NCBI GenBank assembly: GCA_038496445.1
Contig: JALMLS010000039.1
Coordinates: 55,096-119,095 of the forward strand
Reading direction: 5' to 3'
Origin: Trichosphaerium sp. ATCC 40318
Lineage: Eukaryota; Protista; Tubulinea
DNA length: 64,000 bases
Of the stretch, positions 5,632 through 63,281 are shown piece after piece. The position numbers were made by a program, and so were the translations under genes. Each line of letters opens with the position of its first letter. The first letter of the stretch is position 1. The notes under the pieces were generated by a model. That model saw only the letters and a program-made list of their open reading frames with translations, did no database searches and was not told the DNA's origin.

Positions 5632-6456
5632 TTATTTATTGATAGTGTGTGCACCTGCCAATGCCTTCAAACCTTCATCTGTTACATCTGTATATGATAA
5701 ATTAATATCATGTACACCTGCCAATGCCGCAATGCCATTGTCTGTTATTGCCTTACAACAATATAGGTTGATAGTGTGTACACCTGCCAATGCCTTCAAA
5801 CCTTCATCTGTTACATTTGTATATGATAAATCAATATCATGTACACCTGTCAATGCCGCAATGCCATTGTCTGTTATTGCCTTACAACAATATAGGTTGA
5901 TAGTGTGTACACCTGCCAATGCCTTCAAACCTTCATCTGTTACATCTGTATATGATAAATCAATATCATGTACACCTGCCAATGCCGCAATGCCATTGTC
6001 TGTTATTGACATACAACCACATAGGTTGATATCATGTACACCTGTCAATGCCGCAATGCCATTGTCTGTTATTGCCTCACAATAATATAGGTTGATAGTG
6101 TGTACGCCTGCCAATGCCTTCAAACCTTCATCTGTTACTTTTGTACATGATAAATCAATATCATGTACACCTGTCAATGCCGCAATAATGTCGTTTGGTA
6201 GCTCACATCGGTTGAGATCAATAGTTGTATTGTGGAGTAACGGACTACCAGAAAGCATCTGAACTTCATTTGTGTTTTTAATATGGATACGACCATACCC
6301 AACATGGTTATGAACAATATCTCGTAAAAAATGGCACGTTTGGGCTGTACGAAGTGTATACGTCCCTTGTTTGATAATATGGACTATTAACTCAATTGGT
6401 AGCCCAACAAGGTCGAATACTTGGTTGAACTGTGTTTGTTGTTTTTTCTTTTCCAT
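5632..6456 (-). CDS. F-box-like + LRR protein, family copy 1 (8 internal repeat units, C-terminally truncated), intronless
   Basis: N-terminal FDLVGLPIELIVHII...AQTCHFLRDIV (LPxE F-box-like pattern), then 21/22-aa units xGVHDIDLSxTxVTDEGLKAL and AGVHTINLxxCxAITDNGIAAL. First ATG at 6456 (the ORF track starts at an upstream TTG). Ends abruptly AHTINK* without the cap seen in copies 2 and 3. Confidence 0.85.
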   Translation of the reverse strand: MEKKKQQTQFNQVFDLVGLPIELIVHIIKQGTYTLRTAQTCHFLRDIVHNHVGYGRIHIKNTNEVQMLSGSPLLHNTTIDLNRCELPNDIIAALTGVHDIDLSCTKVTDEGLKALAGVHTINLYYCEAITDNGIAALTGVHDINLCGCMSITDNGIAALAGVHDIDLSYTDVTDEGLKALAGVHTINLYCCKAITDNGIAALTGVHDIDLSYTNVTDEGLKALAGVHTINLYCCKAITDNGIAALAGVHDINLSYTDVTDEGLKALAGAHTINK

Positions 6457-6815
6457 TGTATGATCAATGTCAATTTTCGTCAAATAATCGTACTAAATAG
6501 CGTACAAGTGTTGCGAGCACAAGTATACTGCGAGAAAAGTTAATTTATTATCTAAAAAAGGTGGCTTAATGCGTGGTCTACCTTAATCTCATGAATTTAC
6601 AAACGTAAAGTTGTTATTTTGGTATCAAGTTCATTGGAGTTATTAAGGACTTCATGTCACGCAGTGACGTAATGGAACATCTTCTCAATGTTGTTTGTTT
6701 TAATCAATTTCTACACTCGTAAACTTAAAAATCCACAAAAAAAAAACAAGAAAAGCAAAAGTGGATATTGATTGGGAAAGCAAGTTTTTACTTTTATTTT
6801 GAATTACTGTTATAT

Positions 6816-9800
6816 CTAATCCACTTGCATTGCTGTAGGTGCTGATTGTGCTTCATCAAGACCACGTTGTCTTTGTGCATATTGGTTTTGAAGAGTATTC
6901 TCAATATCAAGGACTTCACGAACACGTTCTTGTCCGTCTTTAATACGATTAGCAATAGCAACTTCCTCTGCCTTCATAACTCTATCTGTCATACTAACAT
7001 CAGAATCAAGCTCTTCAATATCCTCACAAAGCTGTGCAATATTCTTCCAAAGCGCTTGAGATCGTTTCTAGACATTTATAAGTATCAAAACAAACAACAA
7101 ACACCAAACACTCAAAAAGCGAAAAAAGAAAAAAAAAACAAGCAAAAAAAGAAAAACGTGACAAAAAGACGTACGAGGTATCCACCATGATAAATACCAA
7201 CACGCTTCAACAAAGCATTGTTTCGATTAACAGTCGCGTTAAACTCATCATCAAGAAGATCTAAAGAATGATTCAAAGCGTCAACATGATCCCTAGTAGG
7301 AGCCTTTGACTTTAAAGCAAACTTATTAGGTGGTAACAAAATCATATCATCATTAGTAACATCCCACATTGAATTAAAATGTTCCTGATCAATCTCAGAG
7401 CTACCACGAACATTCCTTAGTTCAGCATCAATAGCTGCTCTAGCTGATTTCATCTGTGCACTAGAAAATAGATCATATTCATGTCTATCAACAGAAACAG
7501 GTGAAGAAACTCCTTTCTTTGGAAAAAGAGTACAATCATGTCCCATGATTCTGAGCATCTCCTCTTTAATAAGATCAGAAGGCTCGACTGATGACCCCTT
7601 CTTTCCCTTCTTCTTCTTTCCAATATAAAGAGAAGATACAGAAACAGGTCTAGGCAGATCTCTCTTCATAACAATAGAACGAACTCTAAGCTTCTCTTCA
7701 AGTTCAGCTTGTTTCTTTGCTGTCATCTCTTGCTCAATATCAAGAGCATCCTTGATGGTAGTTGATGTTCCATGGAAAGGTTTGTCACTCTCCTCTTCTT
7801 CTATCTCTGGTATAGCAATCTCTACATCGTTCTTGGCCTTTGGAAGGGAAGCTAAACCAGCCTTAAGGCTTCTAATTTGGGATTTATGTCGATCTCTGTC
7901 AGACATTGTTTCATCACGCAACATCTCGTCTCTGATTTAAGTGTTAGATGATGAGGTTCACGTTAAAAAATCTCTAGTACGTACTCATCATTGATTCCCA
8001 TATTATCTCTAACAGGTGTACGAGAAGGCGTCCTTGAAGAAGATACACTAAAGAGCGGCATAAGACTCTGAACTCAAAAAAAAAAAAAAGAAAAGAAAAA
8101 AGACAATACAAAACCGTTTTTTGCTTTCGTACCCTCCTGGAGTAGCATAAGGGTTAGGCGTTGATTGCATAGATGATCTTGGTGTAACACCGCTGAAATC
8201 AGAATCAAGTATATCTGGATTTTCTCCTCCACGGAGTGGTGTTTGAGCAGCTTGCATCGCCTATTAAAACAGTTATTTTCTGATCAACTTTTTTTCTTTC
8301 CTCAACGTACGTATATGTTTTGAGCCTCTTTAGCTAATATATCACTACGGTTAGGCGTTCTAAGAGGTGTTCCTCTACCAGGTGTAGCACCACCAAATCC
8401 ACCAGGACGTCCAGGTGTAGCTACTGGTGTATAAGAGCTAACAAGACCTTTAGTGACTTGAGAACGATCCTCGTCATCATCATCAGCTGCTGGATTATAA
8501 TTTGCTTTCTGTATCTGTCTTAGCTCCTCATCTGTAACTTGTGTAGCAGGTAATTTAAGCTTCTCCCTTCTAGTCAACTCTTCATCTTCAGTCTTTTTAC
8601 CAAGAGCAAAAGGAAGATTTTCTTCAAGCTTTTTCCTTTCTTTTAATCTATCTTGTCGTCTCATTTTTAACTCCTCCTCATGTCTACGACGACCCTCAAG
8701 ATCAGAGAGCTTACGCCTCTTAAACTCAAAAGGCTTATTACCCTTCTCATCGGATGTATCGTAAAAACCAGGTTGTGGTTGATGAAAAAACGGAATTTCT
8801 CTTTCGTAATCAATACCCTTAATCTTACGCCTTCTTCGTCTTGATGGAAGCTCTAAAACAACACGTGTTATTATCATCGTTGACTTTAAATATCACGTGT
8901 AATACAATACTTACCAATACCAGCAGCTTTAAGTTCACGTCTCTTTTGAAGGGCTGCAAGACGACGTGCATCTTTGAGTTGTTTCTCCCTAGCCTTTCTC
9001 TTTGCTTTTTTACCTTTTGTATTCGCAAGACGTGCTCTAGCCTCGTGTAACATTTCCTTCTCTATAAATAGTATTAATACCTTACAATCATACTAAATCA
9101 AACACTACATAAGGTGTAGACACGAAACAAACAAAAAGAAAGGCAAAAAACGAAAAAAAACCGAAACGAAGAAAAAAAAAACTTACCATCTTCATCCATG
9201 TCAACTGGATCTGGCACTGCTGGCTTTGTTTCTGGGTTAGGATCAATCTCACCAACTCTTAAACGTCTAGGGTCGTTCTCTGGGTCATAATCTTCACCTC
9301 TATCGACGTGTCGAGATCTAGAAAGAGCGAATAAGCATTGCCGTTAATAAAAATGACACAAGAGCTAAAACGCTCAAAAACACCGGAATTGATGCTATTA
9401 GAAACGGTATGGCTGTTTTAGACACTTTTTGGTTTCGGTTAAAAGTTTTAAATCAGAAATACGTCTGTGGCGCCTCAAAAGTGTCGTAAATGTACGTACA
9501 CTAGTTCCTCGTATTTTTCAATACATTGAGCAGCAGTACGACGGACAATAGGCGAAATAGTACGCCATTGACATGGCATCAGTTTAACCAGATGTAATAG
9601 TTTCTCTTCCTCCTCGCGTGACCATTCCGTCTGAAAGTAATCGTTTTAGTTCAGTCGCAAGGGTTGTTGATGAAAATTTATTTGTTTTGGCTAAAAACAC
9701 TCAAGAAGTGATTTGCAATGCGGTTTGAGTCTTTTTCAAGCGTATAGCAAAAATAATATCATACCTTTTTAATACTAGGATCTAACCACTCATACCAACG

Positions 9801-62090: not shown

Positions 62091-62391
62091 ATGATGACAA
62101 CGATATACTGTACAGAGCTCTTTAAATAAAGCTCTTTTTGTCTTCTTTTTTTGTTAACGTTATAATACCTTCTTATTCCTGTACACCTAAATTCTATACA
62201 CGCGTTGTGTTGCATTACAAGAAAACTGAACAAAAAAACGGTTACCAGTAACAAAACGGTCCGCAAAGATCCTTTGAGTCAAAATGAGTAAGATCCATTT
62301 ATGTTACACAACAGCCTCAACCGGCGCTACGCTCATAGGCATTGTACTACTAAGAAATACACGCCTCAAATCATAAAAAAACAGTTCCCTA

Positions 62392-63281
62392 ATGAGTAAA
62401 GACGAACGGGAAACTATAGAACTTCTAGACATACCGACAGAGATACTGGCGCACTTGCTTGATTTTTTAGACCGCAGTTATAGATTCCCGCTTCTCAAAG
62501 CTGTAAACGATTATCATCCATAATACTACACCACGTGGGATACAAACGAATCTCTGTTAAATCAAGATCAGACTGTTCACGTCTTTCAGGAAGTCCACTA
62601 CTAATAAACACGGAAATATACTTTGGAGATTTCATAGAAGCAACAGACTCAGATCTTTCTCTAATTTCAGGTGTTCGCAGGCTATTCCTTCGTACAAATC
62701 ATGGTATCACCGATAGAGGGTTACACCGTGCTACTGGTGTTCAATCTTTAACACTACAAGATTGTAAACGCATTACAGATTTCGGAATAGGACCACTTGT
62801 TAAAAATCTTAAAACAATTTGTCTGATAGATGTAGGGTATTATCAATTGACGTTACTTTTTCTTACTGGAATACCGAGTATTAGTTTACCATCATCGAAA
62901 ATACTTACAGATGACATACTGCATAAATTAGCTGGTGTACATACAATCGATTTAAGTGGTTGTAAACGCATCTCAGATAAAGGTATCTCATCATTGGCAG
63001 GTGTACATAAAATATACCTATGTAGCACAAACGTGACCGACAAAGGTATATCAGCTCTTGCTGGTGTGCACACTATTGATATATCTTGGTGTTTGGGAGT
63101 AACTGGATCCTGTATGAAAGATATATCAGACGCATATGAAGTTAAATTATCGTATACTAGTGCCAGTGATTATTGGATTGATCAACTTACCGGCGTCAAA
63201 GTATTACAATTACAAAATTGTAATATTACAAACAAGTGTCTAATTGCTTTGGCACAAAGAGGTGTTACAGTATGTAGGTAG
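62392..63281 (+). pseudogene. F-box + LRR gene with a 1-bp frameshift (pseudogene or assembly indel)
   Basis: MSKDERETIELLDIPTEILAHLLDFLDRSYRFP; one missing base at TTCCCG (about 62488) separates it from ASQSCKRLSSIILHHVGYKRI...LSGSPLL and the LRR ORF. Confidence 0.75.

What the first reader, a model, noticed from the sequence alone, without database searches (positions are those of the whole stretch)
5632..63281. About ten intron-poor F-box-like + repeat genes (LRR and MORN) interleaved with intron-rich housekeeping genes
Seen: six LRR genes, one LRR relic and three MORN-variant genes in 64 kb, all intact N-termini carrying an L..(L/I)P.E(I/L) motif, at all stages of birth and death (recent duplicates, divergent members, frameshifted, decayed). 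Neighbouring genes have many introns each. From recollection, GxVHTxxL..ITD-type LRRs, MORN-variant and RCC1-like repeat proteins are expanded in amoeba-infecting giant viruses. Inference: an arsenal exchanged with Nucleocytoviricota, or spread by retroposition or DNA duplication, with one adaptor type coupled to interchangeable repeat scaffolds.
Basis: partly seen in the sequence, partly recalled or inferred. Interest (0 to 1): 0.75.

Follow-up and report, generated by a model that had tools for sequence, protein, structure and literature searches.

The report
Amoeba's huge LRR and MORN gene families
This stretch of the marine amoeba Trichosphaerium holds ten members of two very large, home-grown gene families that resemble giant-virus genes; the resemblance is already published, but these copies arose by duplication inside the amoeba genome, not by separate transfers from viruses.

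Summary
The window holds six F-box+LRR genes, one decayed LRR relic and three MORN_2 genes, lying between multi-exon CDC5, P450 and neurochondrin genes. The genome is Trichosphaerium sp., ATCC 40318-like. Tekle et al. 2023 (PMC10521059) already report F-box and MORN as the commonest domains among about 1,570 "giant-virus-derived" genes, so the core idea is known. The scan's first readers also noted it on two other pieces of this genome.

What I add:
- **Two N-terminal modules, not one adaptor.** The LRR genes share an ~85-aa F-box-like module. The MORN genes share a ~47-aa LPxE(L/I)Q module that no F-box profile recognises. Each module has at least 150 confirmed copies and about 1,000 candidate places.
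- **Spread by DNA duplication.** Copies carry upstream or downstream flanks and a conserved 5' intron, have no poly-A tail, and match host GC. One pair has dN/dS 0.29.
- **Viral link is real but limited.** Two IMG/VR giant-virus genomes encode the same 21-aa "GVH" LRR behind a short F-box. They lack the amoeba modules, and the amoeba F-boxes group together in a weak tree.
- **Few founders.** Six viral proteins account for 600 of the paper's best-hit rows.

The direction of exchange is unresolved.

The parts
5632..6456 (-). F-box-like + GVH-type LRR gene. It is a single ORF and a recent copy of the 28.5 kb gene. It ends inside the repeat array and lacks the family's C-terminal cap.
   Evidence: ORF list; Pfam LRR_6 at E 9e-24; DNA identity of 86-97% to 28.5-30.1 kb, including about 235 nt upstream; the HSPs stop at 5638.
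13947..14753 (-). Gene with a MORN-type N-terminal module (LPNELQ...KFHVLSKKAA) followed by MORN_2 repeats. It is a single ORF of 268 aa.
   Evidence: Pfam MORN_2 at E 3.6e-29. Its first 67 aa find 150 of 150 scored genomic places at E<=1e-12, out of 1,046 candidates.
18105..18680 (+). Short F-box-like + LRR gene of 191 aa with about 4 repeats and the C-terminal cap. It is a recent copy of the 28.5 kb gene.
   Evidence: The DNA match to 28004-28712 runs about 480 nt past the stop codon.
28485..29891 (-). F-box-like + 17-repeat GVH LRR gene of 468 aa from its Met. The array contains 94-97% identical internal blocks, which points to unequal crossing-over.
   Evidence: Pfam LRR_6 at E 9e-36; repeat positions; internal DNA repeats.
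34163..35309 (-). MORN gene. The first exon has 4 codons (35309-35298). A 46-nt GT-AG intron follows (35297-35252). The second exon carries the LPPEIQ module and the MORN_2 array.
   Evidence: It is about 87% identical in DNA to 56564-58052 over 1.5 kb, including the upstream region. dN/dS is 0.29.
45524..46843 (-). F-box-like + LRR gene of a divergent subfamily (439 aa, single ORF).
   Evidence: Pfam F-box-like at 23.0 bits (cut-off 24.3, E 6.9e-5) and LRR_6 at E 2e-15. It groups with the other amoeba F-box modules in the tree.
49947..50333 (-). Decayed LRR relic with in-frame stop codons.
   Evidence: Weak tblastn matches (E 1e-4) containing stops.
56901..58052 (+). MORN gene, the younger twin of the 34 kb copy. 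The first exon has 5 codons (56901-56915). A 48-nt GT-AG intron follows (56916-56963). The second exon carries the LPAEIQ module and the MORN_2 array.
   Evidence: Pfam MORN_2 at E 1e-37. Identical copies lie on contigs C375 and C319.
58398..59717 (-). F-box-like + LRR gene (439 aa, single ORF) with the HNHVGY-type N-terminal module.
   Evidence: Its first 100 aa find 150 of 150 scored genomic places at E<=1e-22, out of 1,129 candidates. The AF2 model shows an LRR solenoid.
62392..63281 (+). F-box + LRR gene. The genome sequence has a one-base frame break near 62488-62491 compared with an intact transcript-derived protein.
   Evidence: P0003 is 99.6% identical over residues 32-296, and its first 33 residues are encoded in another frame from 62392. 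Precomputed Pfam for P0003 lists PF00646.

Best explanation
The window lies in ordinary nuclear DNA of Trichosphaerium sp. It holds a local cluster of members of two very large, lineage-specific gene families.

**Family 1.** These genes have a conserved ~85-aa N-terminal module that begins with a divergent F-box. It is followed by an array of alternating 21- and 22-aa 'LxGVHxIxL....ITDxGLxxL' leucine-rich repeats. The most likely function is as substrate receptors of SCF ubiquitin ligases. The F-box would dock on Skp1, and the variable positions of the repeats would bind the target.

**Family 2.** These genes have a different conserved ~47-aa helical module (LPxE(L/I)Q...K(F/Y)HxLSKxAA) followed by MORN_2 beta-hairpin repeats. 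I infer that this module is also an adaptor, possibly a very divergent F-box. This is not shown.

**How the families grow and shrink.** Gene-sized DNA duplications carry flanking DNA, and in the MORN pair the small 5' intron. Unequal crossing-over changes the number of repeats. Truncation and decay remove copies. This is a birth-and-death process.

**Relation to giant viruses.** The shared architecture and repeat type are real and imply gene exchange at some time. The hundreds of amoeba copies, including those in this window, descend from a few founders by duplication inside the amoeba genome.

**Shown:** family membership, copy numbers as lower bounds, duplication with flanks, the intron, host-like composition, a transcript for one window gene (62392), and purifying selection on one pair.

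**Inferred:** Skp1 binding, a role in ubiquitin ligases, and the direction of any viral exchange.
For: **Organism**
- MMETSP/EukProt Trichosphaerium proteins match the genome at 99-100%.

**Family sizes**
- The LRR-type module has 1,129 candidate places. All 150 scored reach E<=1e-22 at 51-71% identity. The exact HNHVGY signature occurs 115 times, against 1 in the control.
- The MORN-type module has 1,046 candidate places. All 150 scored reach E<=1e-12. Its strict signature occurs 164 times, against 0 in the control.

**F-box nature of the LRR-type module**
- 17 of 17 members hit PF12937 and 13 of 17 hit PF00646.
- The only PDB profile hits are the F-boxes of Fbw7 and FBXO31, aligned in register.
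- P0003 carries PF00646.
- At least 3 Skp1 loci are present.

**Repeat variability**
- Variability is concentrated at repeat positions 6, 8, 10, 11 and 13.

**Duplication at the DNA level**
- Shared upstream or downstream flanks.
- A conserved phase-0 mini-intron in both MORN copies.
- No poly-A tails, and GC 0.36-0.38 like host exons.
- dN/dS of 0.29 for the MORN pair.

**Amoeba-specific modules**
- Neither module was found in IMG/VR by pattern scan.
- Viral LRR proteins score under 6 bits on the amoeba module profile.
- The 27 amoeba F-box modules fall on one side of a branch from the viral ones.
- The MORN-type module has only 44 representatives among 1.84 billion proteins, and the best of them are MMETSP transcripts named like P0001, which is this amoeba's own.

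**Published table**
- Six viral proteins are the best hit for 600 rows of the paper's viral-LGT table.
- No NCLDV capsid gene was detected in the genome.
Against: - Each F-box match to Pfam is below the gathering score.
- The AF2 models give low confidence for both N-terminal modules, so the F-box fold is not confirmed.
- The MORN-type module has no detectable similarity to any F-box profile.
- Only four viral and two metagenomic F-box sequences were available for the tree. It has 50 columns, and support for the amoeba group is 74/74.
- The Klosneuvirinae proteins named in the paper could not be fetched.
- The LRR parts of one viral protein are 53-57% identical to the amoeba arrays. That is more than some amoeba subfamilies are to each other. 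I read this as consensus-like repeats, but it also fits recent exchange.
- The candidate counts of about 1,000 are upper bounds. Uncollapsed haplotigs inflate them: identical pairs appear on different contigs.
Confidence: 0.75

Rival explanations
1. Many independent transfers from giant viruses. On this reading each of the roughly 1,100-1,500 F-box and MORN genes, including those here, was acquired separately from Mimiviridae-like viruses. This is how PMC10521059 counts them.
For: - Best BLAST hits and Alien Index in PMC10521059.
- The nearest ESM-Atlas clusters are viral.
- Viral contigs carry the same repeat type and architecture.
- Most copies have few or no introns.
Against: - 600 table rows point to only six viral proteins.
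- The amoeba copies share conserved modules that the available viral proteins lack.
- Copies inside the window are DNA duplicates of each other, with shared flanks.
- Their composition matches the host.
- No capsid gene was found.
- Similarity between repeat arrays is not informative about descent.
Confidence: 0.07
2. Host-to-virus capture. On this reading the families are old in the Trichosphaerium lineage, and giant viruses that infect such amoebae picked up a few copies to subvert host ubiquitination.
For: - The amoeba has several deep subfamilies at 27-52% identity and hundreds of copies. The viral contigs I found carry one to a few.
- The GVH-type LRR turned up in only two viral genomes in IMG/VR with my patterns.
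- Viral use of F-box-like adaptors is established knowledge for poxvirus ankyrin/PRANC proteins (from my own knowledge).
Against: - The tree has no root or outgroup.
- Other sequenced Amoebozoa reportedly have few such genes, so an old amoebozoan origin is not shown.
- The viral sample here is tiny.
Confidence: 0.35
3. Retroposition spread the intron-poor copies.
For: Most members are single-exon genes in a genome that averages 8.7 introns per gene.
Against: - The duplicated units include about 235-550 nt of upstream DNA or about 480 nt of downstream DNA.
- The mini-intron is retained in both MORN copies.
- There are no poly-A tracts after the stop codons.
Confidence: 0.03
4. An immune-like receptor repertoire. 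On this reading the families are diversifying sensors directed at viruses or prey, comparable to the expanded F-box families of plants and nematodes.
For: - Very large copy number and local clusters.
- Variable repeat number.
- Variability at the repeat positions that form the binding face in known LRR structures.
- Viruses carry look-alikes.
Against: - The one pair tested shows purifying selection, dN/dS 0.29.
- No expression or infection data are available.
- No site-wise test of positive selection was run.
Confidence: 0.2

Closest known systems
Trichosphaerium 'giant-virus-derived' F-box and MORN gene models (Tekle et al. 2023, PMC10521059)
   Same: Same genome and same genes. The paper reports about 1,570 gene models matching viruses, scattered over scaffolds, about 40% with introns, with F-box and MORN as the commonest domains.
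   Different: The paper counts them as transfers from Harvfovirus, Hyperionvirus and similar donors. Here they resolve into two families. Each has its own amoeba-specific N-terminal module and spreads by in-genome DNA duplication. Six viral proteins account for 600 of the paper's best-hit rows.
Giant-virus F-box + LRR proteins (IMG/VR GVMAG-M-3300007519-48 and UViG 3300027739_000006)
   Same: A short N-terminal LPxE(I/L) F-box-like segment followed by 21-aa GVHTIxL..ITDxGL repeats. The repeat part is 53-57% identical to the amoeba arrays.
   Different: The viral proteins lack the ~40-aa extension (HNHVGY...SGSPLL) of the amoeba module and score under 6 bits on its profile. Each viral contig carries one or a few copies, against hundreds in the amoeba.
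FBXL-type SCF substrate receptors (Skp2, FBXL proteins, TIR1)
   Same: An F-box followed by a leucine-rich-repeat solenoid. Pfam LRR_6 and LRR_FBXL15 hits appear on relatives.
   Different: The repeats alternate between 21 and 22 aa, where FBXL proteins have about 26 aa (the latter from my own knowledge). The F-box is divergent, with no conserved Trp. The family is vastly expanded.
Lineage-specific F-box expansions in plants and Caenorhabditis
   Same: Hundreds of copies in local clusters, evolving by birth and death, with a conserved adaptor and a variable binding domain. The comparison rests on my own knowledge of those families.
   Different: This is a single-celled amoeba, the binding domains are GVH-LRR and MORN_2, and related genes occur in giant viruses.
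Bacterial YwqK-family MORN_2 proteins and giant-virus MORN-repeat proteins
   Same: The same MORN_2 repeat. The best matches outside the amoeba are at 25-35% identity.
   Different: None of these carries the LPxE(L/I)Q module. In viral contig L001, two of the tandem MORN_2 genes instead start with a cysteine-rich, RING-CH-like segment (judged by eye, not tested).

Membership tests
F-box (Pfam PF00646 / PF12937), LRR-type N-terminal module | Significant match to an F-box profile over the ~45-aa LPxE(I/L)...(V/C)(S/C)K segment | tested here: inconclusive
   17 of 17 members hit PF12937 (best E 7e-6) and 13 of 17 hit PF00646. The 45524 gene scores 23.0 bits against a cut-off of 24.3. P0003, which is the window gene at 62392, has PF00646 precomputed. 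The hits are consistent, but every one I ran is below the gathering score.
F-box (Pfam PF00646 / PF12937), LRR-type N-terminal module | Three-helix F-box fold | tested here: inconclusive
   The AF2 single-sequence model is helical at residues 25-53, but pLDDT there is 33-41. The only PDB profile hits are the Fbw7 and FBXO31 F-boxes, at E 0.28 and 1.1.
F-box (Pfam PF00646 / PF12937), LRR-type N-terminal module | Binds Skp1, and Skp1 is present in the organism | not testable with these tools
   Skp1 genes are present at 3 or more loci, up to 99 bits. Binding itself needs an experiment or a complex model.
F-box, MORN-type N-terminal module | Significant match to an F-box profile | tested here: not met
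   0 of 18 module sequences and 0 of 10 full proteins hit any F-box family at E<=1. The PDB profile search found no F-box. hhalign against the LRR-type module gives 4% probability. Only the LPxE motif and the helical prediction agree.
Leucine-rich repeat (LRR_6, PF13516) | Tandem LxxLxLxxN-type repeats that match the profile and fold as a solenoid | tested here: met
   E 1e-8 to 9e-36. AF2 shows a regular strand-helix solenoid with pLDDT 70-86. The repeats alternate between 21 and 22 aa.
MORN repeat variant (MORN_2, PF07661) | Tandem ~22-aa beta-hairpin repeats that match the profile | tested here: met
   E 3.6e-29 to 1.2e-37. AF2 shows beta-hairpins with pLDDT 85-96. The fold matches MORN regions of SET7/9 and radial-spoke proteins weakly.
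Recently acquired giant-virus gene (LGT or integrated virus) | Foreign base composition, or a position next to viral hallmark genes | tested here: not met
   GC is 0.36-0.38 and GC3 0.25-0.44, as in host exons. The neighbours are spliced CDC5, P450 and neurochondrin genes. No NCLDV capsid gene was found in the genome, and the tool itself warns that this negative is weak.
Recently acquired giant-virus gene (LGT or integrated virus) | Nests inside a viral clade in a phylogeny | tested here: inconclusive
   On 50 columns the 27 amoeba F-box modules lie on one side of a branch (support 74/74), and three viral LRR F-boxes are split off by a 97/91 branch. Only 4 viral sequences were available, and the tree has no root.
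Retrogene | Loss of promoter and introns, a poly-A tail, and target-site duplications | tested here: not met
   The duplicates share upstream or downstream DNA and the MORN pair shares its intron. No poly-A tract follows any stop codon.

The most novel reading that the evidence does not exclude
The ~47-aa LPxE(L/I)Q...K(F/Y)HxLSKxAA module at the head of the MORN genes could be a previously undescribed adaptor domain. It might be a very divergent F-box or a different E3-recruiting module. Together with the F-box-LRR family it would make up a receptor repertoire of more than a thousand genes in a single-celled amoeba. That repertoire would be engaged in an arms race with giant viruses, which carry stripped-down look-alikes: a short F-box plus the same LRR, or a RING-CH-like segment plus MORN_2.
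Probability: 0.15. Interest if true: 0.7.

Novelty: already known. Interest (0 to 1): 0.3.

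Why it matters
The published headline for this genome is "unprecedented gene trafficking from giant viruses", and it rests largely on these two families. If the hundreds of copies come from a few founders that multiplied inside the amoeba, the number of transfer events is overstated by about two orders of magnitude. The more interesting question then becomes why a single-celled amoeba keeps over a thousand putative ubiquitin-ligase receptors. The result also shows how best-hit methods mislead on repeat proteins: a viral protein with consensus-like repeats outscores true paralogues.

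Tried and rejected
**Searches that found nothing or little**
- Single-protein scans of IMG/VR with the 58398 and 28485 LRR genes found nothing. The MORN gene found one viral contig, L001.
- Alignment A1 was too diverse for pattern search. Alignments of repeat units worked but gave only two viral genomes.
- A word search restricted to residues 1-100 of the 58398 protein found no relative. This negative is weak, because the genome's own proteome is not in that collection.

I could not see the genomic context of the metagenomic relatives P0004, P0007, P0163 and P0170.

**Structure work that stayed inconclusive**
- The AF2 single-sequence model left the F-box region at low confidence.
- The AF2 model built with 24 paralogues left the MORN-type module at pLDDT 50-62. 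The Foldseek search matched only the MORN part.

**Readings I considered and rejected**
- Retroposition.
- An integrated giant virus. The window has host composition and spliced housekeeping neighbours, and the genome has no detectable NCLDV capsid.

**Steps not taken**
- The spliced MORN models (mini-exon joined to exon 2) were not searched as joined sequences. Only the second exon was used, by reference.
- The Klosneuvirinae proteins named in the paper could not be retrieved with the tools at hand.

Full report
**What is in the window**

The window is AT-rich eukaryotic DNA (GC 0.33-0.43). A tblastn of the window's own LRR and MORN proteins against the window, the ORF list and Pfam together give:
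- Six LRR genes: 5632-6456(-), 18105-18680(+), 28485-29891(-), 45524-46843(-), 58398-59717(-) and 62392-63281(+).
- One LRR relic with stop codons: 49947-50333(-).
- Three MORN_2 genes: 13947-14753(-), 34163-35309(-) and 56901-58052(+).

Every intact N-terminus carries an LPxE(I/L) motif. Between these genes lie pieces of split housekeeping genes: CDC5/Cef1, a cytochrome P450 and neurochondrin.

**Organism**

The window is contig C183 of a 70.3-Mb assembly in 642 contigs.
- An MMETSP transcript protein, P0001, matches the genome at 100%.
- A EukProt/MMETSP0405 protein labelled with taxid 498012 matches at 99%. That taxid is Trichosphaerium sp. ATCC 40318.
- Tekle et al. 2023 (PMC10521059) describe a 70.87-Mb, 37.7% GC Trichosphaerium draft with 8.7 introns per gene.

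That paper reports about 1,570 gene models matching giant viruses, scattered over scaffolds and about 40% with introns. It states that F-box and MORN are the commonest domains among them. First readers of this scan noted the same idea on two other pieces of the genome.

**Two families, two N-terminal modules**

The first 100 residues of the 58398 LRR gene find 1,129 candidate places in the genome. All 150 that were scored match at E<=1e-22 and 51-71% identity, mostly in single open frames of 78-564 aa. The exact HNHVGY signature occurs 115 times, against 1 in the reversed-pattern control, and 4 of those lie in this window.

The first 67 residues of the 13947 MORN gene find 1,046 candidate places. 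All 150 scored match at E<=1e-12. The strict signature K(F/Y)HxLSKxAA occurs 164 times, against 0 in the control.

The two modules are not the same domain:
- hhalign aligns only the LPxE motif, at 4% probability.
- The LRR-type module is consistently, though weakly, recognised as an F-box. PF12937 hits 17 of 17 members and PF00646 hits 13 of 17. The only PDB profile hits are the Fbw7 and FBXO31 F-boxes, aligned in register.
- The MORN-type module is recognised by no F-box profile: 0 of 18 and 0 of 10.
- AF2 predicts helices in the MORN-type module, but with low confidence.
- A full HMM search of 1.84 billion representative proteins finds this module in only 44. The best are MMETSP transcripts named like P0001, which matches this genome at 100%. 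A few others are MORN_2 proteins from unnamed sources.

So 'one adaptor on interchangeable scaffolds' is not what the data show. Each scaffold has its own module.

**How the copies spread**

A self-comparison of the window shows three things:
- The three HNHVGY-type genes at 5.6, 18.1 and 28.5 kb share 86-97% DNA identity. The shared DNA includes about 235 nt upstream or about 480 nt downstream of the coding region.
- Their repeat arrays contain 94-97% identical internal blocks, and the arrays differ in length from 4 to 17 repeats. This is the signature of unequal crossing-over.
- The two MORN genes at 34 and 57 kb share about 87% identity over 1.5 kb, including about 450-550 nt of upstream DNA.

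Both MORN copies keep a 4-5-codon first exon and a 46-48-nt GT-AG phase-0 intron. The donor site has shifted by one codon, but the reading frame is kept. Their dN/dS is 0.29.

No poly-A tract follows any stop codon. GC (0.36-0.38) and GC3 (0.25-0.44) are the same as in the neighbouring housekeeping exons. This rules out retroposition for these copies and argues against recent foreign origin.

The gene at 62392 has a one-base frame break compared with the 99.6%-identical transcript protein P0003. The assembly was built from long reads, so this may be a length error or an allele.

**Likely function**

In 211 repeats taken from 29 paralogues, the framework positions are nearly invariant (L1, G3, V4, H5, I7, L9, T/I-T-D, G, L/I). 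Positions 6, 8, 10, 11 and 13 are the variable ones. In known LRR structures these positions lie on the strand-and-loop face that binds ligands; this comparison rests on established knowledge, not on a test here. The AF2 model is a regular solenoid. The genome has at least three Skp1 loci.

The most likely reading is that the LRR family encodes SCF substrate receptors with a conserved Skp1-docking head and a variable binding array. For the MORN family the same logic is an inference. One observation fits a ubiquitin-ligase context: in viral contig L001, two MORN_2 genes begin with a cysteine-rich, RING-CH-like segment. I judged this by eye and did not test it.

**Relation to giant viruses**

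The resemblance is real:
- The nearest ESM-Atlas clusters to the 58398 protein are Nucleocytoviricota F-box/LRR_6 proteins.
- Repeat-unit alignments recovered two giant-virus genomes from IMG/VR. Their proteins have a short LPxE(I/L) head and the same 21-aa GVHTIxL..ITDxGL repeat.

Four results limit what can be concluded from the resemblance:
1. The viral heads lack the amoeba module. They score under 6 bits on its profile. Pattern scans of IMG/VR for either module found nothing.
2. In a small tree (50 columns), all 27 amoeba F-box modules from four subfamilies fall on one side of a branch with 74/74 support. Three viral ones are split off by a 97/91 branch.
3. The repeat arrays are not informative about descent. 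One viral protein is 53-57% identical to amoeba arrays that are only 37-52% identical to each other. A consensus-like repeat would behave this way.
4. In the paper's own table, six viral proteins are the best hit in 600 rows.

No NCLDV capsid gene was detected in the genome, although the tool warns that this negative is weak. Taken together, the data point to a few founders followed by massive in-genome expansion. The direction of the founding exchange is open. Capture by viruses from amoebae is at least as plausible as the reverse.

**Limits**
- The Klosneuvirinae proteins named in the paper could not be fetched.
- No sister amoeba genome was available for synteny.
- The counts of about 1,000 per family are first-look candidates. 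Some are inflated by uncollapsed duplicate contigs: C375 is a 100% copy of 57-59.7 kb of the window.
- The spliced MORN models were searched by their second exon only. The joined sequence was not used.

**Verdict**

It is partly wrong on retroposition, on a single adaptor type, and on exchange of these particular copies with viruses.

The useful additions are a re-reading of the published transfer count and the definition of an unrecognised MORN-type N-terminal module.

Noticed in passing
window 51662-52609: A 315-aa ORF on the minus strand consists almost entirely of PTTE/PTTA proline-threonine repeats, like a mucin. The region has the highest GC (0.43) and GC skew (+0.27) in the window.
   Followed up: no
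window 43686-44621: A single-exon 311-aa ORF has weak RCC1-like hits (WD40_RLD at E 2e-6). It has no LPxE head and does not belong to the two families.
   Followed up: partly
L001:940-3200 (IMG/VR UViG 3300028025_005716): A viral contig carries a tandem array of five or more MORN_2 genes. Two of them begin with a cysteine-rich segment that looks like a RING-CH zinc finger, which would make them E3-ligase-like MORN proteins.
   Followed up: no
L002:7141-8124 (IMG/VR UViG 3300027739_000006): On the same giant-virus contig as the F-box-LRR gene, an ankyrin-repeat protein also starts with an LPLELI motif. Viruses thus pair this head with several repeat types.
   Followed up: partly
G000:C375:2367-4979 and G000:C319:31147-33758: The MORN+LRR gene pair at 57.1-59.7 kb of the window recurs at 100% identity on C375 and at 95-100% on C319. 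These are either uncollapsed haplotigs or very recent segmental duplications. Similar identical pairs appear in the paralogue lists, for example C244/C267 and C111/C539.
   Followed up: no
window 62488-62491: The genome has a one-base frame break in an F-box-LRR gene whose transcript-derived protein (P0003) is intact. It may be a long-read length error or an allele.
   Followed up: partly
G000:C12:373244-374509 (L034): A further LRR subfamily (P0001-like) has a ~90-aa extension before the F-box and usually one stop-containing gap, probably an intron, near the 5' end. It has 3,220 first-look candidate places.
   Followed up: partly
P0170 (ENA contig, 11 kb): A predicted protein from another source has a MORN-type-module-like segment followed by an MCM P-loop fragment. 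This is probably a mis-joined gene model.
   Followed up: no
G000, whole genome: No match to the NCLDV major capsid family PF04451 was found, although about 1,570 gene models are published as virus-derived. The tool warns that this negative is weak.
   Followed up: partly
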